Source: Macrostomum lignano
Taxonomy: Eukaryota
Length of the DNA stretch: 64,000 bases
Direction: 5' to 3'
Assembly (NCBI GenBank): GCA_002269645.1
Contig: NIVC01000033.1
Span: forward strand, 299,335-363,334
The notes beneath the pieces are model-generated. The model was not told the origin of the DNA. It ran no database searches and worked only from the letters and a program-made list of their open reading frames with translations. The position numbers and the translations under genes were made by a program. Each line of letters starts with the position of its first letter. The first letter of the stretch is position 1. This document shows positions 1-64,000 of this stretch, one piece after another.

Positions 1-3000
1 AAGGAGCTCACGGCACGCCGAGTGAAATGGGGGCAGCAGGCCAGCTGCTCGGTGAACAGAACCTCCGGGTTGGCCGAGCTGCGGGAGAGGGTCACTGCGG
101 GGGGAGAGGATCACTGCGGGGGGAGAGGACCACTGCGGGGGGAGAGGGTCACTGCGGGGGGGGGGAGAGGGTCACTGCGGGGGTAGAGGGTCACTGCGGG
201 GGGGGGAGAGGGTCACTGCGGGGGTAGAGGGTCACTGCGGGGGGGGAGAGGGTCACTGCGGGGGGGAGAGGGTCAGGTCACTGCGGGGGAGAGGGTCACT
301 GCGGGGGGAGATGGTCACTGCGGGGGGGAGAGGATCACTGCGGGGGGGAGAGGGTCACTGCGGGGGAGAGGGTCACTGCGGAAAGGAGGAGGGTCACCGC
401 TGGTGGTTGGGTTGATGCGATTCCTGCAGTTTGCGAACATTGAAATGTCAGAATACTCTAGGAGTTGGAGCAGCTTAACAAGTACAGTGTCAGCTGTCAG
501 CGGATGTAGTCTGTCAGGAATTGTGTCAGGTAAATAGGGTGTCACAGCACTGCTTGGGCTATCATGTCATGTAGTCTGTCATGTAGGATGTCATGAGCTA
601 CAGTAGGATGTCATGAGCTACAGTAGGATGTCATGAGCTACAGTAGGATATCATGAGCTACAGTAGGATATCATGAGCTACAGTAGGATATCATGAGCTA
701 CAGTAGGATGTCATGAGCTACAGTAGGATATCATGAGCTACAGTAGGATATCATGAGCTACAGTAGGATATCATGAGCTACAGTAGGATATCATGAGCTA
801 CAGTAGGATATCATGAGCTACAGTAGGATATCATGAGCTACAGTAGGATGTCATGAGCTACAGTAGGATATCATGAGCTACAGTAGGATATCATGAGATA
901 CAGTAGGATATCATGAGCTACAGTAGGATATCATGAGCTACAGTAGGATATCATGAGCTACAGTAGGATATCATGAGCTACAGTAGGATGTCATGAACTA
1001 CAATAGGATGTCATGAGCTACAATAGGATGTCATGAGCTACAATAGGATGTCATGAGCTACAGTATGATATCATGAGCTACAGTAGGATGTCAGGAGCTA
1101 CAGTAGGATATCATGAGCTACAGTAAGACGTAAGGGACTACAAAAGTGACTCATCAGTTTTCAAGCATTATTAGCAAACTCACGCTTATGCTTAATGCTT
1201 TGAGTCCTTTCAAGGTCGAGCACTTCGCCGTCCATGTTGACAACCAGGCCCATCCGCTTCATGATTGGGACTAAAGCTGAAATTCATACAAGCAATTGGG
1301 ATCTCTGAGTTGCATCTCGACTTCAGAGACCACTTCAGTCAATGTAAAGCGAGCTGATGGATCTGTCTGGAGGACATTGTTGGGGTCTGAAGGACTCTGT
1401 GGGGTCTGGAGGACATTGTTGGGGTCTGAAGGACTCTGTGGGGTCTGGAGGACTCTGTGGGGTCTGGAGGACATTGTTGGGGTCTGAAGGACTCTGTGGG
1501 GTCTGGAGGACTCTGTGGGGTCTGGAGGACATTGTTGGGGTCTGAAGGACTCTGTGGGGTCTGGAGGACTCTGTGGGGTCTGGAGGACTCTGTGGGGTCT
1601 GGAGGACATTGTTGGGGTCTGAAGGACTCTGTGGGGTCTGGAGGACTCTGTGGGGTCCGGAGGACACTGTGGATCTGGAGGACTCTGTGGGATCTCTATA
1701 AAGCATTTTGGAGTCTGGAAGACACTCTGGAGGAAACTGTGGGATCTGGAAGACCACAATGGCTTGCATAAGGCTTTCCTAAAAAGTTAAACTAAAAGAC
1801 AATAAAAGCTGTGGAAACCTTTGCTGAGCTGCAGAGAGCCAGTCTGCTCCGAGATATAGCAGATGAGGTTGTCCCGATTCGGGCACTGACAGTCCTCAAA
1901 GTGAACCACCAGGTCCTGATAGATGTACCGGCAGGAAACGCCGGAATCGAACCCGGGACGTCCGTTCATAGCGTAGAGATTGTAGCCCCAGCCTTCGGTG
2001 AAATTTCCTGTGAAGCTGAACCCGAACCTTGACCACATGGATTTGAGTACTTCGGCAAATACGAAGTGGGTTCGAACTTTGTTGGGCACGAAGCCGGCTT
2101 GTCTGAGGGCCTCCGACAGCTGGGCGGACCTCTGAAATGAGCGGCGGCCGATATTTTCGGGTCATGGAGGGTGAAACTGTCCGGGTCATAGAATATGGCA
2201 TTTAGGGTCACAGAGGGTAAAATTGTCTGGGTCATAGAATATGAAATTTAGGGTCATAAAAGGTGAAATTTTCCAGGTCATAGGGTCATAGAATATGACA
2301 GATCGGGTCATGGAGGTGTGAAACCAGTGAAATTTTTCGGTTAAGAAATCTGTTATTCTCCAAATATTCTGGCGGGTTGATCACAGTTTGCATTAAAATT
2401 CTGTTTTGAACTTAAGCTACTGAGTCAGTAGTAAAACAAGCTGCATAGAGTGCATAAACACAGCATAATTTAAAAGTACTTAAGTACAGAAATCGACTGG
2501 TAGCGCTTCCACTGACGCATTTTCAAATTCAAATTCACGCCACCCGCGCGTGACCGGGCAGGGAGTTGCAGTTAGCGAAGGCAACGGGCAGGGGAGGAAG
2601 GTGAGCAGTGAATGTACAAGTATATAACTGAAAGATTATTAATCAGGGTACTCCGCCCTCATTAAAGCAATTTTATAGAAGCAAGTCATGTGACAATGGC
2701 AGGCTAAAGCACCGACTTTGAGAACAATTCAACTATTCCAAGACCCTCTTTGAAATCAATAAAATTTACTGAAAGCGCTGTACTAGTGTGAGTTTCTGCA
2801 TTTGGGTAAGCCTTACGAAATAAATGACTAAGTGCCTTGGGAGCTGCATTATGAATAGTTATTGCACTGTTTCACATAAGATTTGCCTGCTTGGCACTAG
2901 TAGCTGGAAAACTTGTGTTTGGGGTGCTAAAATGCAAATCTCCCTCACACTCTCCCTCACTCTCTCCCTCACTCTCTCCCTCACTCTCTCCCTCACACTC

Positions 3001-3873
3001 TCCCTCACACTCTCCCTAACTCTCTCCCTCACTCTCCCCACACTCCCCCTCACTCTCCCTCACACTCTACCTAACTCTCTCCCTCACTCTCTCCCTCACA
3101 CTCTCCCTCACTCTCTCCCTCACACTCTCCCTAACTCTCTCCCTCACTCTCTCCCTCACACTCTCCCTAACTCTCTCCCTCACTCTCCCCACACTCCCTC
3201 CCTCACTCTCCCCACACTCCCCCTCACTCTCCCTCACACTCTCCCTAACTCTCTCCCTCACTCTCTCCCTCACACTCTCCCTAACTCTCTCCCTCACTCT
3301 CTCCCTCACACTCTCCCTAACTCTCTCCCTCACTCTCTCCCTCACACTCTCCCTAACTCTCTCCCTCACTCTCTCCCTCACACTCTCCCTAACTCTCTCC
3401 CTCACTCTCCCCCACACTCCCCTCACTCTCTCCCCAACACTCCCCCTCACTCTCTTTCTCAAATTCCCTCACTCTCCTCCACACTCTCCCTCACTCTCCC
3501 CCACACTCTCCCTCACTCTCCCTCACTCCCCCCACACTCTCCCACACTCTCCCTCACACTCTCCCTCACTCTCTCCCTCGCTCTCTCCCTCTCCCTCTCT
3601 CTCCCACTCTCCCTCTCCCACTCTCTCCCTCAATCGGGCACACATCGGGCACTTCTTGATCAGCTTTGCCAGTCTCCCCATCCCCCTCACCTCCTCCTCG
3701 GACATCGCCGAACCCTCCAGTCCACCGTCCGCCAGTGGAGACGGAGTGGCGCCTCTCGGCTGGGGCTGCCTGACGGGCCGGGTCACGGTGCCGCGGTCTC
3801 CCTCAGGCGGAGGCGGAAAAGTCTGCCTCAGCTGGTTGTAGGACATTCCAATCTGGACTCTCGACTGCAAGAC
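1..3873 (-). CDS. Mab-21/cGAS-like receptor (cGLR)-like protein with degenerate catalytic motif; 3' part runs off the window
   Basis: Phase-consistent GT-AG exons 3691-3873, 1819-2131 and 1184-1276 give VLQSRVQIGMSYNQ...SEEE|RSAQLSEALRQAGF...FTGNFTEGWGYNLYAMNGRPGFDSGVSCRY...VHFEDCQC...LSK|ALVPIMKRMG...IKHK. An internal ATG lies at 3846. Further exons near 398-423 and 1-78 are unresolved. The family call is from recalled motif resemblance (GS..EGW..L...GR...DSDhD), not a search. Confidence 0.5.
84..392. repeat. 19-20 bp minisatellite (minus strand TGACCCTCTCCCCCCGCAG)
   Basis: Tandem gggggagagggtcactgcg units with variable G runs. Confidence 0.9.
586..1127. repeat. 20 bp minisatellite
   Basis: (tcatgagctacagtaggat[a/g])n, intronic. 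Confidence 0.95.
1365..1745. repeat. 19-20 bp minisatellite
   Basis: ggggtctggaggactctgt and variants, inside intron 1277-1818. Confidence 0.9.
2940..3625. repeat. CT-rich ~10 bp repeat array
   Basis: (ctctccctca)-type units, inside intron 2132-3690. Confidence 0.9.
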
Positions 3874-5319
3874 CTGCTGAATAAGATGAGGACAAATCGT
3901 TGCAAAGACCCTGAAAGAGTTATTTTGCAGCCAAAAATGGGCAGACTGTCTCGCGGCTTTTATTTATATAGTGTGGCTAAATAAATGCAGGTCCCCGCAT
4001 TTCCAGCCTGCAACGAGCGGGGCTCGGGCATATGGCGCCACTTGCTCATGAATGAAAAAATTTGGGGTTGTTGCCGCGGGATGGGTGGGTGGGTCATTGC
4101 TTAGCAGAGGGCTGGAGAGAAGCAAGGTAACAAAAAGCAGATGTTCGTTTTACGAGCCACGAGCAGCTCTGCATGGGCACGCAGTCGGAGGCCGGGAATT
4201 CGTTTAGTAGTAAGAGCTGAGAATTAATTCAGCGCTAATAAGGCGAATAGCAACTGCCAACTGGGTTGGTGGGGTGGGTGAACGGCCATCTACACAATAA
4301 AGTTCTTCACGCAACTTCTCACAGGGCGGAGCCTGCAGTTCAAAAGGTTAAACCGAAAGAGCTGCGTGTAGCTTCTAAGAAGGATTTGGGACTGGCTTGT
4401 GACCAAATAAACAAATTGAGACCATCTGACTCTGTAGATAATTGCGGACTAAATTACAAGTTCAAGCAGTCCTTGCGCTGCTCTGCTTACTGCTGCAGCC
4501 GTTCTTGATTAATTCAGATTAATTAAACCCCTTATGGTCAGCCTCGGACCCTTGTGGCGCGCAGGCCGCGCCTCTCCTCTATTTTCCGTCCCCCGTGACC
4601 CTCGCCCCACCCCCCAACTCCGTTTTGCTGCAGCCCTGCGTGCCGTTTCGGGGGCGGCGGGGGGGGGGGGGTTGGGCATTTCCCCCTCTCCCTCCCTCAT
4701 TAATAACTGAACTTCTGCTTATCAAGATGATCGCAGCCGCTGATTGGCCAGCTATCTAATACCGTCCATCCCTTCCCCCAATAAGCGCCCCTGTACATTG
4801 CTATAAGTACAGAGAGCCCCCACCCCACTTCGGTCCAGCCCGCTTGGTTTTCCTCTCCTTGCGAACCCTGGAAAAGTAAAGTGAGACAGACAAGTGCGCA
4901 CAGGGGATGATATCAGTAATATTGTAAGAGAAGAAACGTAATGATTAATTGTTTTGATACTAATGATCGATGATGCAATGTATTTCAACAACTTTTTATC
5001 CGCAAAACAGCTAAAATTTACACGACAATGCAATTTTTATGCACACAAATGATGAGTGCAGAAAAAAATTAAATATGGTAATATTCACAAACTGATTAAC
5101 ATACAAGGACCACTAGGAACACTTCGTTATATATCTAGTCTAGTCTAGTCTAGTCTAGTCTAGTAGTCCTTGTTAACTAATCTTGAGCTAATAAATCAAA
5201 TAACATTATTCAAATTTGTCCTGCAAAGTCCAGCAAATTATAACTGAAGGCTAGCTTTTCCAGATTTTTTCCACACTTTGACACTGGATTGATAATTGGC
5301 AGTCATTAGTTAGGTGAGA

Positions 5320-5690: not shown

Positions 5691-10674
<4,984 letters not shown>

Positions 10675-13910: not shown

Positions 13911-21463
<7,553 letters not shown>

Positions 21464-21828
21464 CTGGAATTGGCCAGTTTATGTAAATGCAGATCCGGTG
21501 TATCAATGAATGAGAAATGAACAGTTAGAATGTCAAAGAGAGATTCATTCATAGCCATTTTTTAAGTTATAAAAGATGCACTCGCCACAAGGACAGTCGG
21601 TACACAGACATCTTAAATACAGTTAATTGGCCATTTATTTGAGGCGCAACTCGCATAACAATTGAAACAGATCCGGCTAAATATGCTTGAATGAATATGA
21701 AAATCATTTAATTTCACCTACTAACAGTCGCAAGATGCAAAATGCGGCTGAAATAATAAAATTACAGTATAGACGTAGCAGTTCAAATCAATCCAATGTC
21801 ACGGAGTCCGACTGAGCAGCAACTCAAA

Positions 21829-24800
21829 TCAGGTCTGAGTCATCTTCCTCTGCGGGTCGAACAGCAGCCGCTTGAAGTTCAGGCAAACCTCGACCGGCTC
21901 CGAGGCGCCGTCGCCGCCGCTGGCGCCTTTTTTGGCGCGCTTGCCGCCGCCGTAGCGCTGGCAGAATTCGTCCGACAGGGGCTCCGACATGCGGACTGTG
22001 CACTTGCCGCTCTGCCCGAATGAGCCCTCGATGCGGCCCTGCTGTCCTGTGGACAGGGACACCTGGGGTTCCGGGGGGTGGGCAGGCGTCACGGATGGAT
22101 GAAATTGTCACAGCTGAGATTCCATCAAAATCTCATATATCAAAGAGATTGCTCGAAGCCTGTCATAATATCGATAGACAATCTTGTATAGATAGATCAC
22201 AGTCTTGTAAGAAGATTTCAAAATCTCAGAGAGGTGAATCAAAATCTCATAGAAGTGAATCAGAATTTCATAGAAGTGAATCAGAATCTCATAGAAGTGA
22301 ATCAGAATCTCATAGAAGTGAATCAGAATCTCATAGAAGTGAATCAGAATCTCATAGAAGTGAATCAGAACCTCATAGAAGTGAATCAAAATCTCATAGA
22401 AGTGAATCAGAATCTCATAGAAGTGAATCAGAATCTCATAGAAGTGAATCAGAATCTCATAGAAGTGAATCAGAATCTCATAGAAGTGAATCAGAATCTC
22501 ATATAAGTGAATCAAAATCTCAAAGAAGTGAATCAGAATCTCATAGAAGTGAATCAGAATCTCATAGAAGTGAATCAGAATCTCATAGAAGTGAATCAGA
22601 ATCTCATAGAAGTGAATCAGAATCTCATAGAAGTGAATCAGAATTTCATAGAAGTGAATCAGAATCTCATAGAAGTGAATCAGAACCTCATAGAAGTGAA
22701 TCAGAATCTCATAGAAGTGAATCAGAATCTCATAGAAGTGAATCAGAATCTCATAGAAGTGAATCAGAATCTCATAGAAGTGAATCAGAATCTCATAGAA
22801 GTGAATCAGAATCTCATAGAAGTGAATCAGAATCTCATAGAAGTGAACCAGAATCTCATAGAAGTGAATCAGAATCTCATAGAAGTGAATCAGAATCTCA
22901 TAGAAGTGAATCAGAATCTCATAGAAGTGAATCAGAATCTCATATAAGTGAATCAAAATCTCAAAGAAGTGAATCAGAATCTCATAGAAGTGAATCAGAA
23001 TCTCATAGAAGTGAATCAGAATCTCATAGAAGTGAATCAGAATCTCATAGAAGTGAATCAGAATCTCATAGAAGTGAATCAGAATCTCATAGAAGTGAAT
23101 CAGAATCTCATAGAAGTGAATCAGAATCTCATAGAAGTGAATCAGAATCTCATAGAAGTGAATCAGAATCTCATATAAGTGAATCAAAATCTCAAAGAAG
23201 TGAATCAGAATCTCATAGAAGTGAATCAGAATCTCATAGAAGTGAATCAGAATCTCATAGAAGTGAATCAGAATCTCATAGAAGTGAATCAGAATCTCAT
23301 AGAAGTGAATCAGAATCTCATAGAAGTGAATCAGAATCTCATAGAAGTGAATCAGAATCTCATAGAAGTGAATCAGAATCTCATAGAAGTGAATCAGAAT
23401 CTCATAGAAGTGAATCAGAATCTCATAGAAGTGAATCAGAATCTCATAGAAGTGAATCAGAATCTCATAGAAGTGAATCAGAATCTCATAGAAGTGAATC
23501 AGAATCTCATAGAAGTGAATCAGAATCTCATAGAAGTGAATCAGAATCTCATAGAAGTGAATCAGAATCTCATAGAAGTGAATCAGAATCTCATAGAAGT
23601 GAATCAGAATCTCATAGAAGTGAATCAGAATCTCATAGAAGTGAATCAGAATCTCATAGAAGTGAATCAGAATCTCATAGAAGTGAATCAGAATCTCATA
23701 GAAGTGAATCAGAATCTCATAGAAGTGAATCAGAATCTCATAGAAGTGAATCAGAATCTCATAGAAGTGAATCAGAATCTCATAGAAGTGAATCAGAATC
23801 TCATAGAAGTGAATCAGAATCTCATAGAAGTGAATCAGAATCTCATAGAAGTGAATCAGAACCTCATAGAAGTGAATCAGAATCTCATAGAAGTGAATCA
23901 GAATCACAGAGCTGAATTAAAGTCTCACAAATACCCCGAGACAAAGAGATCAGTGACATCGAAGCCCCACCCCCCCCCCAAATCACGCACCTGCAGTCCA
24001 ATAAAGACATCAAGCGCGGTCTCCTTTCGAAACAATCCAGTCACCACCACGGTGTAGGGGTCCTTGACCCGGTCCAGCCGGCCTCGCCGACACTTTGGCC
24101 GGTAGACTCGAACGAGTTTGGGCAGCTGAGCAGTGCGATAGTCGGCTGAGGTGAGCAGCTCCAGCGGCCGGCCGTGCATGGCGATGCGGCACACGTTCTG
24201 GTTGATGTCCACGTCCAGCTTGGAGACTATCACCGTGGCGCTGGGCGGGGCCTGGGAGAATTATTGTTGCGTAATGGGATTTCATATTCATAACTGGGAT
24301 ATTGTACGCTGTGGTTTCTGTTACTGTGGGATAGAGATATAAGCTCAAAGTCTCGTTAGATAGAATATTCCCCTAATGTCAGATCAGAATTCCTCAATAT
24401 GTCAGAGCCTGTGTCAGATTACAATTCCCCAGTATGCCAGAGCCTGTGTCAGATTACAATTCCCCAATATGCCAGAGCCTGTGTCAGATTACAATTCCCC
24501 AGTATGTCAGAGCCTGTGTCAGATTAGAATTCCCCAGTATGTCAGAGCCTGTGTCAGATTACAATTCCCCAGTATGTCAGAGCCTGTATCAGATTACAAT
24601 TCCCCAATATGCCAGAGCCTGTGTCAGATTACAATTCCCCAGTATGTCAGAGCCTGTGTCAGATTAGAATTCCCCAGTATGTCAGAGCCTGTGTCAGATT
24701 ACAATTCCCCAATATGTCAGAGCCTGTATCAGATTAGAATTCCCCAGTATGTCAGAGCCTGTATCAGATTACAATTCCCCAATATGCCAGAGCCTGTGTC

Positions 24801-27800
24801 AGATTACAATTCCCCAGTATGTCAGAGCCTGTGTCAGATTACAATTCCCCAATATGCCAGAGCCTGTGTCAGATTACAATTCCCCAATATGTCAGAGTCT
24901 GTGTCAGATTACTATTCCCCAATATATCAGAGTCTGTGTCAGACTACAATTCCCCAGTATGTCAGAGCCTGTGTCAGACTACAATTCCCCAGTATGTCAG
25001 AGCCTGTGTCAGACTACAATTCCCCAGTATGTCAGAGTCTGTGTCAGACTACAATTCCCCAGTATGTCAGAGCCTGTGTCAGACGCTACTCCCCGATCAA
25101 GACTCACCAGAACAGGCCGCTCAAACTCCAGCAGGGCGTGCAGGCCAGGCGGGCAGTCCCGCATGCTGGCCTCGTCCAGGTATTCGCAGAACTGCTCGGC
25201 CAGCGGCTGGTCGGGCCGCGGCGCCTGGAACAGCAGCAGGCTGGCCATGGCGGTCTCGTGGCCGAGGCTGACGTGCAGCTTGGACTTGGAGCGCACAGGC
25301 AGTTTGTAGTGCGGCACCGGAGACACCGGCAGCAGCAGGGCGTGGATGGTGGGCACGGAGCCGGGCGCGCACACCAGGCCGCGCTCGAGCAGGCGCGGGT
25401 CCAGCTGGGTGACGCAGAGGCCCAGCCGGTCGCCCTGCTGAGCGAAATCGACCGGCTTGCGGAATACCTGAGTTGGGGGGGGGGAGAGCTTGGCTCAGTA
25501 ATAATGCGAGCATATTACAGCTATACTACTGTGCTGTGACATTCTGGGTACACCAGCAACTCAAAGCCTTTTAGTGCAAAATGATGTTACTACTGCTACT
25601 ACTATATTAGTACTACTACAATTAGTACTACTAATAATATTAGTATTATCACTAGTACCACTAATACTACTACTATTAGTACTACTGATACTACCATTAA
25701 TACTATTGCTATTAGTACTATTACCTACTACAATTAGTACTACCAATACTATAGTACTACCACCACTACTACTACTACTACTATTATTACTACTACTAAT
25801 ACCACTACTACTATTATTACTACTACTACTATTAGTGCTACTACTACTATTAGTAGTACTACTACTACTATTAGTACTACTACTACTACTATTAGTACTA
25901 CTACTACTACTATTAGTACTACTACTACTATTAGTACTACTACTACTACTATTAGTACTACTACTACTATTAGTACTACTACTACTACTATTAGTACTAC
26001 TACTACAATTAGTACTACTACTACTATTAGTACTACTACTACTGTTAGTACTACTACTACTATTAGTACTACTACTAATACTATTAGTACTACTACTACT
26101 GATACTATTTACTGCTAATACTACTTTTCCACAAAGATAAATACATACGAGCTGACCTGCCGCCGAACACCCATGCAGAAAAAACATATTTTCAATGCCC
26201 CCCCACCCTATGACTGCCCCCTCCAGCCAGACAGCCGATCCCAGCCTCACCTGCATCCCTTTGACTCGACGCTGCTCGTGCGCGACCTCCACGGTGTCGC
26301 CAACGCGAACGCAGCCGGCCAGGACGGTGCCGGTCAGCACGGTGCCCTGGCCGCGGATGCCGAAGCAGTGGTCCACGGCGAATAGAAACGGACCGGCGGG
26401 GCTTCGAGTGGGCACCGGCGCGGTGGCAACCAGCTGCTTGACGAGATTCGCCAGGCCGATAGGCTCGGGAGCGGCGGCGTCGGGTGCGTCGCCTCCCGAC
26501 GGGCTGGCGGCCACGGCTGCCACGGGACAGTTGGCGAACTTCGTGCCGGCCAGGGTCTTCAGCAGGCGCTTGCTCAGCCGGTCCAGGGAGCGGTCGCGCT
26601 CCGCTTCCGGGAGGAGATCCACCTGCGATGAACCGCTTGGCAATGGAATTGTCTGGGAAATTCCCCTAGGCAATCTTGAAACCTACTGAAAAATTCCTCT
26701 AGAGAATTTCAAATCCTAACAGAAAAATTCCCTTACAGAATCTTAAATCCTACTGAGAAATTCCCCTCAGTAATTTTGAAACCTACTGAGAAATTCCCCT
26801 CAGTAATTTTGAAACCTACTGAGAAATTCCCCTCAGTAATTTTGAAACCTACTGAGAAATTCCCCTCAGTAATTTTGAAACCTACTGAGAAATTCCCCTC
26901 AGTAATTTTGAAACCTACTGAGAAATTCCCCTTAGTAATTTTGAAACCTACTGAGAAATTCCCCTCAGTAATTTTGAAACCTACTGAGAAATTCCCCTCA
27001 GTAATCTTGAAACCTACTAAGAAATTCTCGTATTTAAACATAAATCATACTGAGAAATTCCCCTACAGAATCTTAAATCCTACTGAGAAATTCCCCTAAG
27101 TAATCTTGAAACCTACTGAGAAATTCTCCTATTTAAACATTAAATTCTATTGAGAAATTCGAATAGAAAATCTAAAATCCTACTAAGAAAATTCCCCTAG
27201 CGAATCATAAATAATGCTGAAAAAATTCCCCTAGATAATCTTAAATTATCTCAGCGGATCTTAAATCCTGCTGAGAAATTCCCCTAGAGAATCTTAAATC
27301 CTGTTGAGAAAGTGCTTACACAAAGACTAAACAAATAACAGTGAGTTCGCACTCTGCACCTTATTGATGACGAGCAGCAGGCAGGAGCAGACGATCTCGG
27401 CCAGCACCAGGCACTCTGCAGTCTGGGTCTGGATGCCCTTAGTAGCGTCCACAACCAGCATCACCGCGTCGATAATCTGGGCACCGCCGATGACCGCACG
27501 AATAAGCGATGCGTGTCCGGGACAGTCAACCAGTGTGAACTGCAATTCGGCCGGTCGGCCCCAGCGCTCGGACAGTTCGGCCGGCAGCCGCCGCCAGGAG
27601 CTGCCAGTGGCGGAAGAGTCTTCCTCAGCAAAAGACACGCTGAAAGTTGAGAAGCCCAGGTCCAGGGTGATGCCGCGCTCCTGACTCTGTGGATTCTTGT
27701 CGAAGCTGGCCGTGCTGGCCTGGGTGCTCAGCGCCTTGGACAGCGAGGTCTTGCCGCTGTCCACGTGACCCAGCACGCCAATGTTCACGTTCAGCGGCAT
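21829..27800 (-). CDS. EEFSEC: Selenocysteine-specific elongation factor
   Basis: Exons 27360-27800, 26251-26622, 25108-25467, 23991-24251, 21829-22062 = 1668 nt, all phase 0. Motifs NVNIGVLGHVDSGKT, SQERGITLDLGFS, DCPGHASLI, FAVDHCFGIRGQGTV, GRIEGSFGQSGK. Confidence 0.95.
22230..23905. repeat. 21 bp minisatellite in EEFSEC intron 4
   Basis: (gaagtgaatcagaatctcata)n. Confidence 0.97.
24375..25083. repeat. 35 bp minisatellite in EEFSEC intron 3
   Basis: (cagagcctgtgtcagattacaattccccagtatgt)n. Confidence 0.95.
25580..26125. repeat. (TAC/TAT/TAG) trinucleotide tract in EEFSEC intron 2
   Basis: actactactattagt... repeated. Confidence 0.93.
26685..27300. repeat. 33 bp hairpin-unit minisatellite in EEFSEC intron 1
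   Basis: cctactgagaaattcccctcagtaattttgaaa. The unit contains the inverted pair tactgag/ctcagta. Confidence 0.92.
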
Positions 27801-29329
27801 GCCTTCAGTGCCGGGCACAGCTGCAAGGCGGCCACAAATCACTGCAGTCTCTGCGAAGTATTTTTCAATCTGATAGCTAGAATCCTGAGGTGCCTGACCC
27901 GCTAAAGGTGGCCAGGTGTGGCCTGCTGTGTACAGCTTGTGAAGCGCCAACAATAGACTTAGGCCGAGAAGCGTCCCAGAGTCATTTGCGTCGCCCCAGA
28001 CTCATAGCAAGTAACGCAGGTCCGAAATAGGAAAGAAGTGACTCTAGACGACTCTAAAACCACGAGATGTCTCGGTAAAAGTCGCCAAAGTCGTCAAAGA
28101 GTCGCCTAAGAACCAATTTGAGGCGTTTTATTGCCTGCGACTCTGAAACGACGTGACGCGAGTGACTCTGGGGCCGTAGAGTCATATCCACGGATATTAA
28201 AAAAATAACTAGATGGGCCACTCAGGCATATATACTTAGTAAAACAGCTTCCTACTTTCAGTTCAGTAGCAAAGAAGAATACATAAGCTATTTTATAAAA
28301 ATAGAGGCAGCTGAAATAACTTCGATAAGTTTAGAAGCCAATCTTGCAGGCGTAAACAACTTGCTAATTTGTTCAGCAATAATGTACATTAGCCAGTCCA
28401 CTGAAATGTACATGGCAGTTTTAGGGTGGAATTCCGAGAAAAGCAATAAAAATTGGGGTGGGCGGAGGGGGGTAGGGTGGAAGGGCGCGGTTGGAGGGTT
28501 TAAGCTGGGGGGGGGGGTAGGAGCCAATAAAGTATCCTTGGCTTTACAAATACATTAAAATGCTTGTCTAACCTACTACTGAACTGAAAGTAGCTTACTC
28601 GCAAATGTGCTGAGTGGCTTATCTAGTTATTCTAGTATCTAGCTGAGGCGTGCCAGAGTCGCTGTAGAATCACTGAGTTGCCTCTAAAGCGCATCTGCGC
28701 CAACTTATGAATTAGAAAGTTAAGCGCCAACAAAGGTCGACTTTTTTCCCGCCTCTCCGTCGCATTGCAGTCGTTTGAGTCGTTAAAAGGTCGCAAGTGT
28801 TGCCCCCAGAGAGTCGCTAGAGTCACTCTTTAGCGATTGTTGCCACTTCAGCTTAATTTGCCACTTGTTAGTGGTATGTTGCTTACTAACTGCTACCAAC
28901 TTTGCTTAACTTAGCGCCGATCGAACTGGGCCAGCGGAAATCGACATTAATTCAGTCACATCTTTTATAATTAATGAGTAGTCTGTATAAAACCAGTACT
29001 AATATATATTTAAGCAATATATTCACAATATTGACAAATTTATGGTGACAAGTTGCAAACAGTAATAAATCACATAGCACAGGTATTAAGTGACTTGGAA
29101 TCTTAATTAACAATATTTTAAATTAAAGCGAATGATCGATCAATATCATGCATTATTGCCAATCTGCTTGTCTCTTGGATCCAGCGTTAATTGGGTAATT
29201 TAAAATCGTTGATTCCGCAATCACTGTCCTGATTATTGAATTTTTATGAGCCAGAATAAGCAAAACAAGAGTGAAAATTTCTATAAAAGGGAGTTCGTTG
29301 TGAGGCTTGACTACAGTAGCTTATGTGTC

Positions 29330-29682
29330 TGCACTGTCTATCCACTGCTTAATTCATCTGTCTGCAGTGTCTATCCACTGCTTAATTCATCTGTCTGCCC
29401 TGTCTATCCACTGCTTAATTCATCTGTCTGCAGTGTCTATCCACAGCTTAATTCATCTGTCTGCAGTGTCTATCCACAGCTTAATTCATCTGTCTGCAGT
29501 GTCTATCCACTGCTTAATTCATCTGTCTGCACTGTCTATCCACTGCTTAATTCATCTGTCTGCAGTGTCTATCCACTGCTTAATTCATCTGTCTGCCCTG
29601 TCTATCCACTGCTTAATTCATCTGTCTGCAGTGTCTATCCACTGCTTAATTCATCTGTCTGCCCTGTCTATCCACTGCTTAA
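29330..29682. repeat. 33 bp minisatellite between BORCS5 and EEFSEC
   Basis: (gtgtctatccactgcttaattcatctgtctgca)n. Confidence 0.94.
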
Positions 29683-29908
29683 TTAGCGCAGCTCACCCTT
29701 TCACTGTGTAATGACAATGATGCATGGCAGGGCACCTTGCTGCAACGTCTTTGGCGACATCGTCCCACAACTAAAGCGCTGAGGCAATCTGCCCATTCCG
29801 CAGACTCCTGAACACACACAGGCGCGACAATACTGTACTCACGCAGGCTTCATCTCTGCGCCTTCATGGGTACGAGGCGGTGGATATTCAATGTTGCTGC
29901 TGATCAAT

Positions 29909-31541
29909 TCAATCTAATAGAGAATTCGCAGGGCTTGGCGTGGAGGCATTCGAGGCTCCGGCAGCGCGACTTGCTGCTGCTGCAGTGGAAACAGCAGAGC
30001 TGTCAGACTGCTGCTGCTGCGGCAGGGTGGACTGCCAGGAAAACGGCTCCAGCTGGCAGTCGGCTGGCAGAGCGGAGTTCAGCTCCTCCATCAGGGCGCC
30101 GAGGTGCCTGAAAAGGGGGGCGGCGGGCTGAAGCTGCAACTGACTGCAGGGCACAGACTGAATCTACCCTGAAGATAATTAAACTTTTAATATACGGATC
30201 ACTTATGCGTAAATAATATAAGCGTATTACAGAATCCGAACAATAGACTACAGAATCCGACTAATATGTTACAGAATCTGACCAATAGATTACAGAATCT
30301 AACCAATATATTACAGAATCTGACCAATAGATTACAGAATCCGACTAATAGATTACAGAATCTGATCAATAGATTACAGAATCCGACTAATAGATTACAG
30401 AATCTGACTAATAGATTACAGAATCTAACCAATAGATTACAGAATCTAACCAATAGATTACAGAATCTAACCAATAGATTACAGAATCTAACCAATAGAT
30501 TACAGAATCTGACTAATAGATTACAGAATCTAACCAATAGATTACAGAATCTGACCAATAGATTACAGAATCTAACCAATAGATTACAGAATCTGACTAA
30601 TAGATTACATAATCCGAACAATAGACTACAGAATCATGAGACTAATAGATGACAGAATCTGACCAACAGATTACAGAATCTAACCAATAGATTACAGAAT
30701 CTAACCAATAGATTACAGAATCTAACCAATAGATTACAGAATCTGACTTGTAGATTACAGAATCTGACTAATAGATTACAGAATCCGAACAATAGACTAC
30801 AGAATCAGACTAATATGTTACAGAATCAAACATAAATGCCAGAATCCAGTTTCAAACTCAGACTAGCCACAGTAGCCAGGCATTTCCTCACTTTGCGTGA
30901 CTCCGCATCCTGGTAAGCATGCTCCTCAGCTCAGTGACCTTGTGAATTTGCTCGGCCAGCCGCTGGAACTTCTTGTGCCGCTCCTGCAGGCTGTCGTGAA
31001 TGGACTTGGACCCGGCCTCCAGCTCCTTGATGCGGCCGCACAGCGAGTTCTGATCGAACGCCACGGCCTCGGCGCACTGCTTCAGGTGCTCCTGGTAGCG
31101 GGTGCAGAAGTGCAGCAGGCTGCGGTGGTCCACTCGCTCAGCGGCCGGAGCCGCCGACGCCGAGCTGTCCAAGGCGTGTCCGGTCGACGTGGCCGATGAT
31201 TTGATCAGCGGCATAAAAGTTGGTAGAGTGCCAAGCGCGCGCAACTCGTCGCTAACGGCGGCGCTGTCGGGCCTGGGGCCGGAGTTCACCACCACAATGC
31301 GATGCTTGCCATCGTCCGCAGTAGACGAACTGCCGCTCGCCGGAGCTGCCGCGGTGTTGGCAGCAGCCGAGTTTCCATGGAGATTAAAGTTTGACTGAGG
31401 CGGGCTGGAGTCGCTGCCAATCGGCCTGTTGACCGAATACTGGTGGCTGGCCGCGGCTTTGCCGGCCGCCGATGACGAGCCTCCGGGATGCTGGCGCCTG
31501 TCTGATGAAGCTCCGCCGCCGCTGCTGGACTCGTTGCCCAT
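29909..31541 (-). CDS. BORCS5: BLOC-1-related complex subunit 5 (myrlysin/LOH12CR1)
   Basis: join(30892-31541, 29909-30107) = 849 nt. N-terminal MGNESS (myristoylation-type Gly2), IVVV, P.FMPLIK, RYQEHLKQCAEAVAFDQNSLCGRIKE, ELNSALP...LEPFS. Confidence 0.92.
30225..30830. repeat. 21 bp minisatellite in the BORCS5 intron
   Basis: (ttacagaatctaaccaataga)n. Confidence 0.95.
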
Positions 31542-39870: not shown

Positions 39871-41641
39871 CTACAGAATCTCGCCCCCATTGCTGGTATC
39901 CCGCAGCGCGGCCCCAGCAGCGGCAGCGCCGTCGGCAGCCTGAGCTTCGTCAGCGCGCAGGCTGTCAACAAACTTGGCAAACAATTCAATGGAAGCCTTC
40001 AAAGAAGTGGACTTGTAAGCCATGAGATGCGGCTTCTGTTGCTGCTGCTGAGCAGAGGCGGAACTGAGCTCGGCAAGCAGCTGGGCCAGGGTGGGCACAG
40101 AGTCCGGCTCGAAGCTGTCAACAGCCGCCGGATCGAACGGCACGCAGATTCGGCCAGTCTTGGGGTGGACGCAGAACGGCGCCTTCAACAGGTGATTGAC
40201 GCCGGTGCTGACGCCCACGTCCAGCCTGGGGTAGGCGTACTGGATCAGCAGCTGCTGCTCCACATCCTGCCGGCCTCGGCTCACGGCGAACTTGCTGATC
40301 GTCTTCCAGCGCTTCAAGGACGGATAGGCGTCGGGATCGGCCAGCCAGGAGGCCACGGCGGTGTCCGCCACCGAGCGGAGATCCTCGGGCAGCTGCGCCA
40401 ACAGGGCGCGGGTTCGATCCTCGGTGCCGAACAGATCCTGCTGACGGACCAGATCGTCGAATTGGCGACGAATAGCGTCGGCTGCCGCGGCCACGCTGGG
40501 GTGGCACTTCGGCGGCTGCTGCTGGCCCTGCTGGGGCTGCTTGTCTCCGGGCCGGCGCACCAGGGACAGGTACTCGATCACGGCGGTGCGAGCATTGGCC
40601 GACAGTTGCCGGGCGGTGCGGTCGCAAATCCAACAGTGAATGCCGCGACGGCCGGAGTAAACCCACAGCAGGTGGCGGAACCCGAAGTCGCAGCGCAGGG
40701 CCCGGTCCAGGACCTGGCGGTGCGGAAATCGGCTTTATATTAGTTGCCCACACCTGCTCCAGTCTTGCGCCAGGCCTGAGGCCCAACACCAGCCAAGAAG
40801 GGAATCTCAAACTAGCTTTGGGATCCGAGAACACCCAATGCCAGGCAAAGAACCGGAGCCAGCCCTGAAGCACCCCAAATCAGCCCCGAAGCACCTTCAA
40901 AACTAGGCATAACCACCAAAAGCTAGCCCTGAAGCACCAAAAGCCAGCCCTGAAGCACCCAAAGCCAGCCATGAAGCACCCAAAGCCAGCCCTGAAGCAC
41001 CCAAAGCCAGCCCTGAAGCACCATAAACGAGCCTTGAAGCACAATAAACCAGCCCTGAAGCACGCAAAGTCAGCCCTGAAGCACCCAAAGCCAGTCCTGA
41101 AGCACTATAAACGAGCCCTGAAGCACCATAAACGAACCCTGAAGCACGATAAACCAGCCCTGAAGCACGCAAAGTCAGCCCTGAAGCACGCAAAGTCAGC
41201 CCTGAAGCACCCAAACTCAGCCCTGAAGCACCATACCTGCACAGCGATCCGCATGAACAGCCAGCACTTTGAGCACACGCGAGCATCTGAGCAGCACAGC
41301 CGAACTCCGTCATAGTCGGTGAGGTCAATATCGATCACCAGCTCTTTCTCCTTAGCCTGGAAGGCCCCGCCGCTGACGGTCGCTCTGTCCCGCGGCCGGC
41401 AGCTGTACACGGCGCCGATGTCAATCTTCTCGGGCCGACGGTCCAGCAGGGCTCCGCGAAACTCGGACTCGTCATTGTAGCTGAGAAATCTCAGGTAGAT
41501 ATCATCGTGCAGGGTCATGGAGAATTCTCTGTTGGCAAAGTAGGCTGGGGATCTGTAGGACAGCCACTGCATCATCAGGTGGGTGGGGTACAGCCGCTTG
41601 TAGTAGGTGGCCAGCTCCTCCGGTAGCAGCTCCGCGCACAT
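39871..41641 (-). CDS. PRIM1: DNA primase small (catalytic) subunit
   Basis: join(41237-41641, 39871-40713) = 1248 nt. Motifs YYKRLYP, NREFSMTLHDDIYLRF, KIDIGAVY, KELVIDIDLTDYD, LWVYSGRRGIHCW, YPRLDVGVS, HLLKAPFCVHPKTGRICVP. Confidence 0.96.
40855..41232. repeat. 21 bp minisatellite in the PRIM1 intron
   Basis: (ccctgaagcacccaaagccag)n and variants. Confidence 0.92.
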
Positions 41642-41739
41642 GCTCAAAGGCTGCAGAAATAGGAAAGCAAAATCAAGCAAATTTAATCCCATCATCCCAT
41701 TTAATCTACATATCTATTACCACAACCATCCACCACGAC

Positions 41740-62309: not shown

Positions 62310-64000
62310 CTGCGCGCTTGAATTTTGAAGTTTGAATTAGGCGACGTTGAGCCGACCTACATGGTTGACACCCGGCTGCCGTTTGGTGCAGCGTTGTTGC
62401 AGCGTTGGTGCAGCGTTTGGTGTCAGCAGCTTCTTTCAGGTTAGCAATGCCATCCGGTTCATGATGCTCAAGCGCAAGTTTTACAACTTCGAGGTCTACA
62501 TGGACGATTTCGGCTTCGCGCGGTCGCTGACTGATTGCTGGCGGTTCTACACGGAGCTGACGCAGCTGGTGCAGAGGCTGGGCCTGCCTGTTAACTGGAA
62601 GAAGTGCGTTCAGCCGACTCAAGAAATGTGCTTCCTGGGCATCCAGTTCAATACTCTGTCGGGGCTCATGAGCTTGCCAGGATCCAAAGTGGAAGAGCTG
62701 CGGGTCAGCCTTGATCAGTGCTGTGCGATGCGGTGGATCTCCAAGCATGAGCTGCAGAAGCTGGTGGGAAAGCTCAACTGGGCCTCCCAGGTGATTGTCA
62801 ACGGCCGGCCGTTCTTGCGCGACTTGATCGACCGCGTCAACAACCTGTCAAGCTCTAAGGATCGGCTATTGGTGGATGACCAGTTGAGAAGCATTCTCGG
62901 CTGGTGGAATGTGGCCTTGCGGCAGCAGCGAGGTCGTGAAATTTGGCCCACGGACAGGAGACCGGTTGCCATAGAGACGGACGCCTGCCTGGTGGGAGCG
63001 GCAGCTATTTTGCGTGACCCGGCTGGTTTTGACTGGTGCTACCTGAAGTGGGATGTCGATGCTGGTGGCGTCTTCAGCGAGTGCTGCATCAACTACAAGG
63101 AGGCTGCTGCGGTCCTGCTGGCCTTGCTGCGCTGGTGCCATCCGCTGCACAACTGCCGGGTCGCTGTCTACTGCGACAACGCCGCCGCCTTCGCGATCAT
63201 CAACAAGGGGTCTTCCAGGGAGCCCCGGTTGCTGCGGCTGCTGCAAACTGTTGCTCTGCTTTGCCTGAAGCAGAACGTGGTGGTTACTGCCCATCATGTG
63301 CCTGGCCGGTTCCAGCTGTTTGCTGACGCAGCTTCCGCCTGCACTGCCGTCAAGAATTGGTGAATTTTGTGTTGCGAGCCTATGCAACATGTTGTGTCAG
63401 CCCGCAAGAGTTTGCCGGTCATGCGCTCAGCCCTCCCACCGCCGCCTTTCTCCTTTTGCAGGTCGCCTCCCTGGGTCTCTCAACGCCGCCGCCGCCAAGC
63501 TTCTCCAGCAGGCCTACGCCTCATCATCCAAGAAGTCGCTATCGTCCGCCATCCGCTCCTGGCAACGCTTCTATCTCGAGCGGCGGTTCGACCCGCTCTG
63601 CTGCCGGGCGGAGGACCTCGCGAATTACGTTGCCTGACTCGTGGATGGCCGGCTCAGCTCCTTCGGCAGCGTCCGCGTGCACATCAGCGCTCTCACCGCC
63701 AACTTCCGGCTGGCAGGGGCGCCAGATCTGACCAAGCATCCGCTGCACCTGGTGCTGCGGGGAGCCAAGCGCGAGCTCGGGGCGGAGCCGAGCCGCAAGC
63801 TGCCGGTGTCTCCCGAGATTTTAACAAGGCTGCGTCGCCAAGCTGACTGCTCGAACCCAGCCCAAGCTGCCTGCTGGGCGGCAGTCATGTGCGCCTGGTG
63901 GGGTATGTTTAGGAAGTCCAGCCTGTTGCCTGCTGGGCGCGCTGATCCGCCAGTGCTGCGGCTCAGTTCTCTGTCGGAGTGCAAGGACGGTCTGCTTCTG
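62310..64000 (+). mobile_element. Truncated DIRS-order (Ngaro-like) retrotransposon: RT-RNase H plus tyrosine recombinase
   Basis: RT motifs YMVDTRLPFG and EVYMDDF, CFLGI. RNase H motifs IETDAC, INYKE, YCDN, ADAAS. The overlapping recombinase ORF has LRGAKR, RKLPV, GMFRKSSLL, with an in-frame stop near 63637. No gag or RT N-terminus seen. Confidence 0.88.

What the first reader, a model, noticed from the sequence alone, without database searches (positions are those of the whole stretch)
21455..21830. ERCC4/XPF has no start codon of its own; a spliced-leader AUG would complete it in frame
Seen: the minus strand reads TAA ACT GGC CAA TTC CAG|TCT ACA GAC GGC CTG CTG GAC TAC GAG. The conserved XPF N-terminal LL[DE]YE follows a CAG acceptor (21464-21465), an in-frame stop lies 16-18 nt upstream of the exon start, and no Met occurs for about 130 codons. 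Only 365 bp separate this acceptor from the EEFSEC stop. Established: flatworm spliced leaders end in AUG, which can act as the initiator Met (shown in schistosomes). Inference: trans-splicing gives [10 protein letters not shown]..., so an essential repair gene would depend on the SL for its start codon. A weak alternative is a cis micro-exon ATGTCT|GTGTAC in the spacer.
Basis: partly seen in the sequence, partly recalled or inferred. Interest (0 to 1): 0.78.

Follow-up and report, generated by a model that had tools for sequence, protein, structure and literature searches.

The report
XPF gene needing a spliced-leader start
In this Macrostomum lignano flatworm contig the DNA-repair gene XPF/ERCC4 has no start codon of its own and most likely gets its AUG from the trans-spliced leader RNA, a mechanism already documented in other flatworms, so this is a clean but ordinary example.

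Summary
On the minus strand an in-frame TAA (21481-21479) lies 15 nt before TTCCAG|TCT ACA GAC GGC CTG CTG GAC TAC GAG, with the exon starting at 21463. The first genomic in-frame ATG is 131 codons further on (21070). The EEFSEC stop codon lies exactly 365 nt upstream.

The window is Macrostomum lignano. Its published 35-nt spliced leader (SL) ends in ATG. Its top trans-splice acceptor motif, [T/C]TNCAG, matches this site. Its operon criterion (same strand, under 1 kb) is met.

The N-terminus [10 protein letters not shown] has a normal length for XPF proteins. GC content jumps from 0.38 to 0.60 at the acceptor. Three UniProt M. lignano gene models could only "start" XPF by fusing it to EEFSEC.

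No RNA evidence was reachable, so trans-splicing at 21463 is inferred (confidence about 0.75).

SL-AUG initiation is established in Schistosoma and Echinococcus, so this is a new member of a known kind and of low-to-moderate interest.

Side finding: a 1-nt frameshift in XPF exon 7 (C-run 14396-14393). It is probably an assembly error, otherwise a decaying gene copy.

The parts
21829..22065 (-). Terminal coding exon of EEFSEC (3' part), with stop codon TGA at 21831-21829. The gene's own ATG is at 27800.
   Evidence: Aligned to human eEFSec residues 527-614 of 616. The N-terminal GTP_EFTU domain lies in ORF 28001-27330.
21464..21828 (-). 365-nt AT-rich spacer, made up of the EEFSEC 3'UTR plus the inter-cistronic region (the outron of XPF).
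   Evidence: Length 365 nt and GC 0.37. The 60-nt bins just upstream of the acceptor have GC 0.30 and 0.38, against 0.60 and 0.78 downstream.
21634..21639 (-). AATAAA, the probable EEFSEC poly(A) signal. It ends 170 nt before the acceptor.
   Evidence: Its function is inferred from the canonical metazoan poly(A) site layout.
21579..21612 (-). The GU-richest stretch of the spacer (GATGTCTGTGTACCGACTGTCCTTGTGGCG...).
   Evidence: 11 TG/GT dinucleotides per 30 nt against a spacer mean of 4.3 (sd 2.4). It starts 22-26 nt after AATAAA.
21479..21481 (-). In-frame TAA that closes the XPF reading frame 15 nt before the acceptor.
21464..21469 (-). TTCCAG, the predicted SL trans-splice acceptor.
   Evidence: It matches [T/C]TNCAG, the top motif at M. 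lignano trans-splice sites, found at 9,551 of 21,754 sites (PMC8629364). Position.
21038..21463 (-). XPF/ERCC4 exon 1 (STDGLLDYE...LDLCQ), with donor CAG|GTGAGC. GC3 is 0.87.
21068..21070 (-). First genomic in-frame ATG of XPF. Starting here would remove the residues aligned to human XPF 14 to about 134.
13911..20519 (-). XPF exons 2-7: 20519-20322, 19510-19241, 17723-17479, 16968-16116, 15537-15328 and 14554-13911 (stop at 13913-13911). The nuclease motif [18 protein letters not shown] is intact.
   Evidence: Manual model. Full-length alignment to human XPF at E=5e-163. Pfam ERCC4 at E=2.5e-24.
14393..14396 (-). CCCC run where one base is missing. The frame breaks between LHFP and QLRILW. The downstream frame stays open and conserved to the natural stop.
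21883..21888 (-). Cryptic phase-0 donor GAG|GTTTGC inside the last EEFSEC exon. If cis-spliced to 21463 it would give an in-frame EEFSEC::XPF fusion.
   Evidence: Read directly from the sequence. The related hexamer GTTTGT is the real donor of XPF intron 3.

Best explanation
XPF/ERCC4 is the downstream gene of a two-gene, operon-like unit, EEFSEC then XPF, in Macrostomum lignano.

- The pre-mRNA is cleaved and polyadenylated after the EEFSEC AATAAA (21639-21634).
- The 35-nt spliced leader, which ends ...TTGCATG, is trans-spliced onto the TTCCAG acceptor, so the mature XPF mRNA begins SL-AUG|UCU ACA GAC GGC CUG CUG.
- The SL's terminal AUG is the only in-frame initiator. It gives [10 protein letters not shown], probably matured to Ac-STDG...

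Shown here: the missing genomic ATG, the upstream in-frame stop, the acceptor motif and its phase, the gene identities, the spacing and the species.

Taken from the literature: the SL sequence, the motif, the operon criterion, and the fact that flatworm SL AUGs can initiate translation.

Inferred: that trans-splicing happens at this site and that the SL AUG is used there.
For: 1. Species. UniProt M. lignano models A0A1I8FQ47, A0A1I8FA24 and A0A1I8FI84 carry this exon. A0A1I8FQ47 is 100% identical over 56 aa.

2. The M. lignano SL ends in ATG and is followed by a GTAAG donor. 30-39% of genes are trans-spliced, the top acceptor motif is [T/C]TNCAG, and operon spacing peaks near 100 bp with a 1-kb threshold (PMC8629364; PMC5730564). 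The site here is TTCCAG. It lies 365 nt after the EEFSEC stop and about 150 nt after the predicted poly(A) site, on the same strand.

3. There is no in-frame ATG between the TAA and the conserved LLDYE. The next ATG is 131 codons on.

4. The acceptor is in phase 0, so SL-ATG reads straight into the XPF frame. The chance of the motif ending at a permitted in-frame position is 0.02-0.04.

5. The coding signal starts at the acceptor: GC goes from 0.38 to 0.60, and exon GC3 is 0.87.

6. The predicted N-terminus has 5 residues before the LLDYE motif. This is typical. Among 100 homologues that reach the motif the median is 4, and among 35 homologues of at least 800 aa the median is 6. Several start MLEYE or MLEFE. 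No conserved upstream exon is therefore missing.

7. The three other genes in the window with a visible N-terminus (EEFSEC, LOH12CR1/BORCS5, PRIM1) each have a genomic ATG 9-55 nt after the same kind of acceptor. XPF has 0 nt and no ATG.

8. All three UniProt models that contain exon 1 are EEFSEC::XPF chimeras, and the two mapped back onto the window join XPF exactly at 21463. So gene finders working on other assemblies or copies also found no XPF start.

9. The mechanism has precedent. The S. mansoni SL AUG is in frame in 28% of trans-spliced cDNAs and is needed by more than 40 of them (PMC9851317). E. granulosus and S. japonicum show conserved SL-AUG use (PMC3510090).
Against: - No SL-containing read, cDNA or peptide for this gene could be obtained. 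Paper supplements hold nothing on ERCC4, XPF or EEFSEC. Exact look-ups of the predicted proteins failed.
- The spacer holds five ATGs with in-phase GT donors. This gene really does use weak donors (GTGACA, GTTTGT, GTTGGT), so a cis 5' exon cannot be excluded on motif grounds.
- One candidate, ATG 21611...GCGA|GTGCAT (MSVYRLSLWR), has GC3 of 0.70.
- This copy carries a frameshift in exon 7, so it might not be the expressed copy.
- The acceptor motif occurs about once per 250 nt in the window.
Confidence: 0.75

Rival explanations
1. A short cis-spliced 5' exon inside the spacer supplies the ATG. Candidates are ATGTCT|GTGTAC (21611-21606), ATG...GGCGA|GTGCAT (21611-21582, MSVYRLSLWR) and ATGGCT...AACT|GTTCAT (21558-21523). 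The XPF transcript would then come from its own promoter inside or just after the EEFSEC 3'UTR.
For: In-phase ATG and GT combinations exist. XPF's own introns use non-GTRAG donors in 3 of 6 cases. The 21611-21582 candidate has GC3 of 0.70.
Against: No candidate donor matches GT[G/A]AG, the motif found at 65% of M. lignano donors. The resulting introns would be 59-142 nt, against 510-1517 nt for the six real introns of this gene. Most candidates have non-coding composition, with GC3 of 0.26-0.33 against 0.87 for exon 1. The 21611 ATG lies in the GU-rich element right after AATAAA, at about the EEFSEC cleavage site. In a 365-nt AT-rich spacer such ATG...GT combinations are expected by chance. 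XPF homologues need no extra N-terminal residues.
Confidence: 0.1
2. The missing ATG belongs to a dead or mis-assembled copy. This XPF locus would be a decaying duplicate in the partly duplicated M. lignano genome, or the sequence carries errors, and a functional copy with a normal start exists elsewhere.
For: A 1-nt deletion in the C-run 14396-14393 breaks the nuclease and HhH2 region. M. lignano assemblies carry extensive duplication (79% duplicated BUSCOs, PMC10468722; PMC8629364).
Against: Apart from that single homopolymer site, the gene is intact over 948 codons. The post-frameshift frame stays open and conserved to the natural stop, which is typical of an assembly indel. Three other M. 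lignano models from other assembly loci show the same STDGLLDYE exon fused to EEFSEC, and none has a start of its own. No single-base indel creates an in-frame ATG between the TAA and LLDYE (reading of the sequence).
Confidence: 0.07
3. XPF is translated as a C-terminal fusion to eEFSec. The cryptic phase-0 donor GAG|GTTTGC (exon end 21889) in the last EEFSEC exon would be cis-spliced to the 21463 acceptor, giving ...[16 protein letters not shown]...
For: Both sites are in phase 0, so the fusion is in frame. GTTTGT is a genuine donor in XPF intron 3. Three UniProt models predict EEFSEC::XPF chimeras.
Against: Those models hop between frames on an indel-rich assembly and are not transcript evidence. 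The 19 EEFSEC residues that would be skipped are conserved with human eEFSec to its C-terminus. No XPF homologue examined carries such an N-terminal fusion apart from these models. One in three GTs is in phase by chance.
Confidence: 0.03
4. Translation starts at a non-AUG codon, such as the CUG of Leu5 or Leu6 in LLDYE, on an mRNA that is not trans-spliced at 21463.
For: In-frame CTG CTG codons are present at 21451-21446. Near-cognate initiation is known in eukaryotes (discussed in PMC9851317).
Against: It would need a long AT-rich leader holding seven ATGs, each opening a short upstream ORF or out-of-frame reading frame. It is unnecessary in an organism whose SL supplies an AUG at a consensus acceptor in the right phase.
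Confidence: 0.03

Closest known systems
SL-AUG-initiated mRNAs of parasitic flatworms (Cheng et al. 2006, J Biol Chem 281:733, as cited in PMC9851317 and PMC12582326; E. granulosus survey PMC3510090)
   Same: The SL's 3'-terminal AUG is joined directly to the ORF in frame. There is no genomic initiator. The conserved N-terminus of the orthologue is recovered only if the SL AUG is used.
   Different: This is a free-living macrostomorph rather than a neodermatan. The gene (XPF/ERCC4) was not found named in any paper held here. There is no cDNA or peptide evidence in this case.
Macrostomum lignano SL trans-splicing and operons (Ustyantsev & Berezikov 2021, PMC8629364; Wudarski et al. 2017, PMC5730564)
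   Same: Same species. The acceptor fits [T/C]TNCAG. The neighbouring gene is on the same strand less than 1 kb away. XPF is a conserved gene of the class reported to be preferentially trans-spliced.
   Different: Those papers do not analyse the use of the SL ATG as an initiator. Whether their SL-read track marks 21463 could not be checked here.
Downstream genes of C. elegans operons (SL2 trans-splicing)
   Same: A poly(A) signal of the upstream gene, a short inter-cistronic region of about 100-150 nt, then a trans-splice acceptor of the downstream gene.
   Different: Nematode SLs do not end in AUG, so downstream genes keep their own start codon. Here the SL would supply the initiator codon itself.
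XPF/ERCC4 orthologues of other animals (human 6sxa; Schistosoma spindale CAI2734200.1; Logan contig DRR639838_75667)
   Same: A helicase-like N-terminal domain beginning at LL[DE]YE, an ERCC4 nuclease domain and an HhH2 tail, with a very short N-terminal extension.
   Different: Those orthologues have a genomic ATG: MYELLEYE in Schistosoma, and MGDVDDLLDYE six nt after a TTTTCAG in the Logan contig. The Macrostomum gene has none.

Membership tests
Flatworm mRNA initiated at the SL 3'-terminal AUG | The organism has an SL RNA whose leader exon ends in AUG. | tested here: met
   The species was identified as M. lignano from identical UniProt models. The published SL is ...TTGCATG followed by GTAAG (PMC8629364). 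No SL RNA gene lies in the window itself.
Flatworm mRNA initiated at the SL 3'-terminal AUG | [quoted passage not shown] | tested here: met
   TTCCAG at 21469-21464 fits [T/C]TNCAG. No GT[GA]AG donor accompanies any in-phase ATG in the spacer.
Flatworm mRNA initiated at the SL 3'-terminal AUG | The SL AUG is in frame with the main ORF, with no stop between them. | tested here: met
   ATG|TCT ACA GAC GGC CTG CTG reads straight into XPF, and the exon is open to its donor.
Flatworm mRNA initiated at the SL 3'-terminal AUG | No genomic in-frame AUG can give the conserved N-terminus. | tested here: met
   TAA lies 15 nt upstream. The first ATG is at codon 132. Homology to human XPF starts at exon codon 5.
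Flatworm mRNA initiated at the SL 3'-terminal AUG | SL-bearing transcripts map to the acceptor. | not testable with these tools
   No M. lignano RNA-seq or cDNA is reachable. Supplements and exact look-ups were empty.
Flatworm mRNA initiated at the SL 3'-terminal AUG | The protein N-terminus derives from the SL AUG. | not testable with these tools
   This needs N-terminal proteomics or ribosome profiling.
M. lignano operon (criteria of Ustyantsev & Berezikov 2021) | Adjacent genes on the same strand with a repeat-adjusted distance under 1 kb. | tested here: met
   EEFSEC stop at 21829 to XPF exon start at 21463 is 365 nt, both on the minus strand. No tandem array was reported within the spacer 21828-21464.
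M. lignano operon (criteria of Ustyantsev & Berezikov 2021) | The downstream gene is SL trans-spliced. | not testable with these tools
   Inferred only.
XPF/ERCC4 structure-specific endonuclease | Helicase-like N-terminal domain, ERCC4 nuclease domain with the GDXn-ERKX3D motif, and a C-terminal HhH2. | tested here: met
   Aligned to human XPF 14-906 at E=5e-163. Pfam PF02732 at 86 bits. [18 protein letters not shown] is present.
XPF/ERCC4 structure-specific endonuclease | An uninterrupted reading frame. | tested here: not met
   A 1-nt deletion in the C-run 14396-14393 truncates the raw model at 845 aa. Whether this is an assembly error or real is unresolved.

The most novel reading that the evidence does not exclude
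The operon precursor is also cis-spliced from the cryptic in-frame donor inside the last EEFSEC exon (GAG|GTTTGC, exon end 21889) to the XPF acceptor. This would make an eEFSec::XPF fusion protein, so XPF would borrow the EEFSEC start codon rather than, or as well as, the SL AUG.
Probability: 0.03. Interest if true: 0.6.

Novelty: new member of a known kind. Interest (0 to 1): 0.25.

Why it matters
If confirmed, XPF synthesis in M. lignano would depend entirely on SL trans-splicing, because a pre-mRNA that is not trans-spliced carries no usable initiator for XPF.

This has practical weight for annotation. Gene finders that ignore the SL either fuse such genes to their upstream neighbour, as three UniProt entries do here, or truncate them.

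It would also extend SL-AUG initiation from parasitic flatworms to a basal free-living one, in a transgenesis-capable model where it can be tested directly.

It does not reveal a new mechanism.

Tried and rejected
- The Rfam scan of the window found nothing, and the SL sequence has no match within 3 mismatches. There is no SL RNA gene here.
- Searches for ERCC4, XPF and EEFSEC in the supplements of PMC8629364, PMC5816591, PMC5730564 and PMC5173321 found nothing. No paper held here mentions both Macrostomum and ERCC4.
- Cheng 2006 and Wasik 2015 are not held.
- The contig look-up for P0001 found nothing on record.
- Exact look-up of four versions of the predicted XPF protein found none in the collection.
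- The three word-index protein searches returned only UniProt M. lignano fragments and chimeras plus distant XPFs. The index is lossy. It missed P0004 and P0005 despite 52 and 84 shared 5-mers. Absence of transcript-derived proteins is therefore weak evidence.
- I tried to derive the odd junction residues of the chimeric models (VAS, SRILHLAT, KRLL) from the window sequence. They could not be reconciled and are attributed to indels in the older assembly.
- I rejected using donor-motif mismatch alone to dismiss cis exons, because XPF's own introns use GTGACA, GTTTGT and GTTGGT.
Full report
**Observation.** Reading the minus strand confirms the finding to the base.
- An in-frame TAA lies at 21481-21479.
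- It is followed by ACT GGC CAA TTC CAG, with the AG at 21465-21464.
- The exon starts at 21463 and reads TCT ACA GAC GGC CTG CTG GAC TAC GAG.
- The upstream ORF ends with TGA at 21831-21829, and the spacer is exactly 365 nt (GC 0.37).
- The first genomic in-frame ATG is at 21070-21068, 131 codons into the exon.

**Gene identities.**
- Exon 1 aligns to human XPF residues 15-144 (E=2.7e-20).
- I built a seven-exon model: 21463-21038, 20519-20322, 19510-19241, 17723-17479, 16968-16116, 15537-15328 and 14554-13911.
- Its product aligns to human XPF 14-906 (E=5e-163). It carries the Pfam ERCC4 domain and the GDY...ERK...SD nuclease motif.
- The upstream ORF is the C-terminus of eEFSec, aligned to the penultimate residue of the human protein. 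Its GTPase N-terminus, with its own ATG at 27800, lies further upstream.

**Organism.**
- The closest database matches are UniProt gene models of Macrostomum lignano. A0A1I8FQ47 is 100% identical over the first 56 residues of the exon. A0A1I8FA24 and A0A1I8FI84 also carry the exon.
- The window's architecture is that of a Macrostomum contig: GC-rich exons, AT-rich spacers, and introns filled with tandem arrays of 20-35-nt period.

**What is known for this species.**
- M. lignano has a single 35-nt SL, CGGTCTCTTACTGCGAAGACTCAATTTATTGCATG, followed in the SL RNA gene by a GTAAG donor.
- 30-39% of genes are trans-spliced.
- The top motif at trans-splice acceptors is [T/C]TNCAG.
- Intergenic distances within operons peak near 100 bp, and the authors use under 1 kb on the same strand as the operon criterion (PMC8629364; PMC5730564).

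**Fit of the locus.**
- The acceptor TTCCAG matches the motif and is in phase 0, so SL-ATG|TCT ACA... gives [10 protein letters not shown].
- The chance of the motif ending at one of the ten permitted in-frame positions between the TAA and LLDYE is 0.02-0.04.
- Composition changes at the acceptor: GC is 0.30 and 0.38 in the two 60-nt bins upstream and 0.60 and 0.78 downstream. Exon 1 has GC3 of 0.87.
- An AATAAA lies at 21639-21634. The GU-richest 30-nt stretch of the spacer begins 22-26 nt after it. This is the canonical layout of a metazoan poly(A) site, which I infer from general knowledge.
- That layout leaves about 150 nt between the predicted EEFSEC 3' end and the XPF acceptor, as in an operon.

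**Is an upstream coding exon expected?** No.
- An exhaustive HMMER search with exon 1 found 463 homologues.
- Among 100 whose alignment reaches the LL[DE]YE motif, the median number of residues before it is 4. Among 35 proteins of at least 800 aa the median is 6. Several start MLEYE or MLEFE.
- The SL-AUG model gives 5 residues.
- Starting at the first genomic ATG would delete about 120 conserved residues.

**Context within the window.**
- The three other genes with a recognisable N-terminus each have a genomic ATG shortly after the same type of acceptor:
  - EEFSEC: ATG 20 nt after TTGCAG.
  - LOH12CR1/BORCS5: ATG 55 nt after TTCCAG.
  - PRIM1: ATG 9 nt after CTGCAG.
- XPF is the exception, with 0 nt and no ATG.
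- All three UniProt models that contain XPF exon 1 are chimeras with the EEFSEC C-terminal exons. tblastn of A0A1I8FA24 and A0A1I8FQ47 against the window places the XPF part from exactly 21463.
- These models hop between frames on an indel-rich older assembly and are not transcript evidence. They do show two things: EEFSEC-to-XPF adjacency holds in other copies or assemblies, and gene finders never found an XPF start.

**Rivals.**
- Cis 5' exon. The spacer has five ATGs with in-phase GT donors.
  - No donor fits GT[GA]AG.
  - The implied introns (59-142 nt) are far shorter than the gene's real ones (510-1517 nt).
  - Most candidates look non-coding.
  - However, three of XPF's six true donors are also non-consensus, so a cis exon is not excluded. 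I give it about 0.10.
- In-frame EEFSEC::XPF fusion through the cryptic donor GAG|GTTTGC. It is formally possible but would remove conserved eEFSec residues. About 0.03.
- Non-AUG initiation. About 0.03.
- Defective or mis-assembled copy. This is raised by a 1-nt deletion in the C-run 14396-14393, which breaks LHFP|QLRILW. The downstream frame remains open and conserved, so an assembly indel is more likely. The ATG-less 5' end is shared by the other models. About 0.07 that this explains the missing start.

**Comparison with what is known.**
- Use of the flatworm SL's terminal AUG as initiator methionine was shown in schistosomes in 2006. The AUG is in frame in 28% of trans-spliced cDNAs and is required by more than 40 (as summarised in PMC9851317).
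- It was extended to E. granulosus and S. japonicum, where SL-AUG use is described as phylogenetically conserved (PMC3510090).
- All reported parasitic flatworm SLs end in ATG (PMC12582326).
- The present case is a further instance, in a free-living basal flatworm and in a named DNA-repair gene.
- Other XPF genes have a genomic ATG: Schistosoma spindale (MYELLEYE), and the closest non-Macrostomum hit, Logan contig DRR639838_75667 (MGDVDDLLDYE, ATG 6 nt after TTTTCAG). Loss of the genomic ATG therefore looks lineage-specific.

**Limits.**
- No RNA or peptide data for M. lignano were reachable.
- The word-index protein search is demonstrably lossy.
- The central step, trans-splicing at 21463 and use of the SL AUG, is therefore inferred.

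**Verdict.**
- Observation confirmed.
- Interpretation supported at about 0.75.
- Novelty: new member of a known kind.
- Interest 0.25.

Noticed in passing
window 14393-14396 (minus strand, XPF exon 7): A CCCC run where five C are needed. This 1-nt frameshift splits LHFP|QLRILW in the nuclease domain. The downstream frame stays open and conserved to the natural stop at 13913-13911. It is probably a homopolymer assembly error, otherwise a young pseudogene copy.
   Followed up: partly
UniProt A0A1I8FA24 (P0001), A0A1I8FQ47 (P0004), A0A1I8FI84 (P0005); window 25283-21254: These three M. lignano database proteins are frame-hopping chimeras of EEFSEC C-terminal exons and XPF. Two carry misleading names ('VPS13 domain-containing', 'ILEI domain-containing'). 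Two further fragments (A0A1I8FQ68, A0A1I8J2E4) start at XPF exon 2.
   Followed up: yes
window 21883-21891 (minus strand): A phase-0 GAG|GTTTGC donor-like site lies inside the last EEFSEC exon. Splicing from it to 21463 would be in frame and give an EEFSEC::XPF fusion.
   Followed up: partly
window 41641-41656 (minus strand, PRIM1 start): A CTGCAG acceptor lies 9 nt before the PRIM1 ATG. An SL ATG spliced there would be in frame and add MPLS to the N-terminus. At EEFSEC (TTGCAG ending at 27821, 20 nt before the ATG at 27800) the SL ATG would be out of frame and open a short ORF overlapping the start.
   Followed up: no
window 15000-30000, e.g. 22218-23905, 17791-19163, 19624-20319, 20659-20988: In the scanned part of the window (15000-30000) most introns of XPF and EEFSEC carry a long tandem array: 80 copies of a 21-mer, 69 copies of a 20-mer, 172 copies of TCTG, and so on. 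These arrays inflate intron length, while the EEFSEC-XPF spacer has none.
   Followed up: no
window 6428-55663 minus strand; 62341-63360 plus strand: Minus-strand gene order is MED12 (with a long poly-Q/His tail), PRIM1, WDR36/UTP21, LOH12CR1/BORCS5, EEFSEC, XPF, then an unidentified gene at 10689-6428. A reverse-transcriptase/RNase H fragment lies on the plus strand at the window's end.
   Followed up: partly
L001 (Logan DRR639838_75667) 2100-4660: The closest non-Macrostomum XPF (47% identity over exon 1) is an uninterrupted 850-codon ORF in an AT-rich contig of unknown organism. Its ATG lies 6 nt after a TTTTCAG. An SL ending in ATG spliced there would also be in frame. The 3' part of the contig is much more GC-rich and may be chimeric.
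   Followed up: no
tool behaviour: The word-index homology search missed proteins sharing 52 and 84 exact 5-mers with the query, which the exhaustive HMMER search did find. Negative results from that tool are weak.
   Followed up: yes
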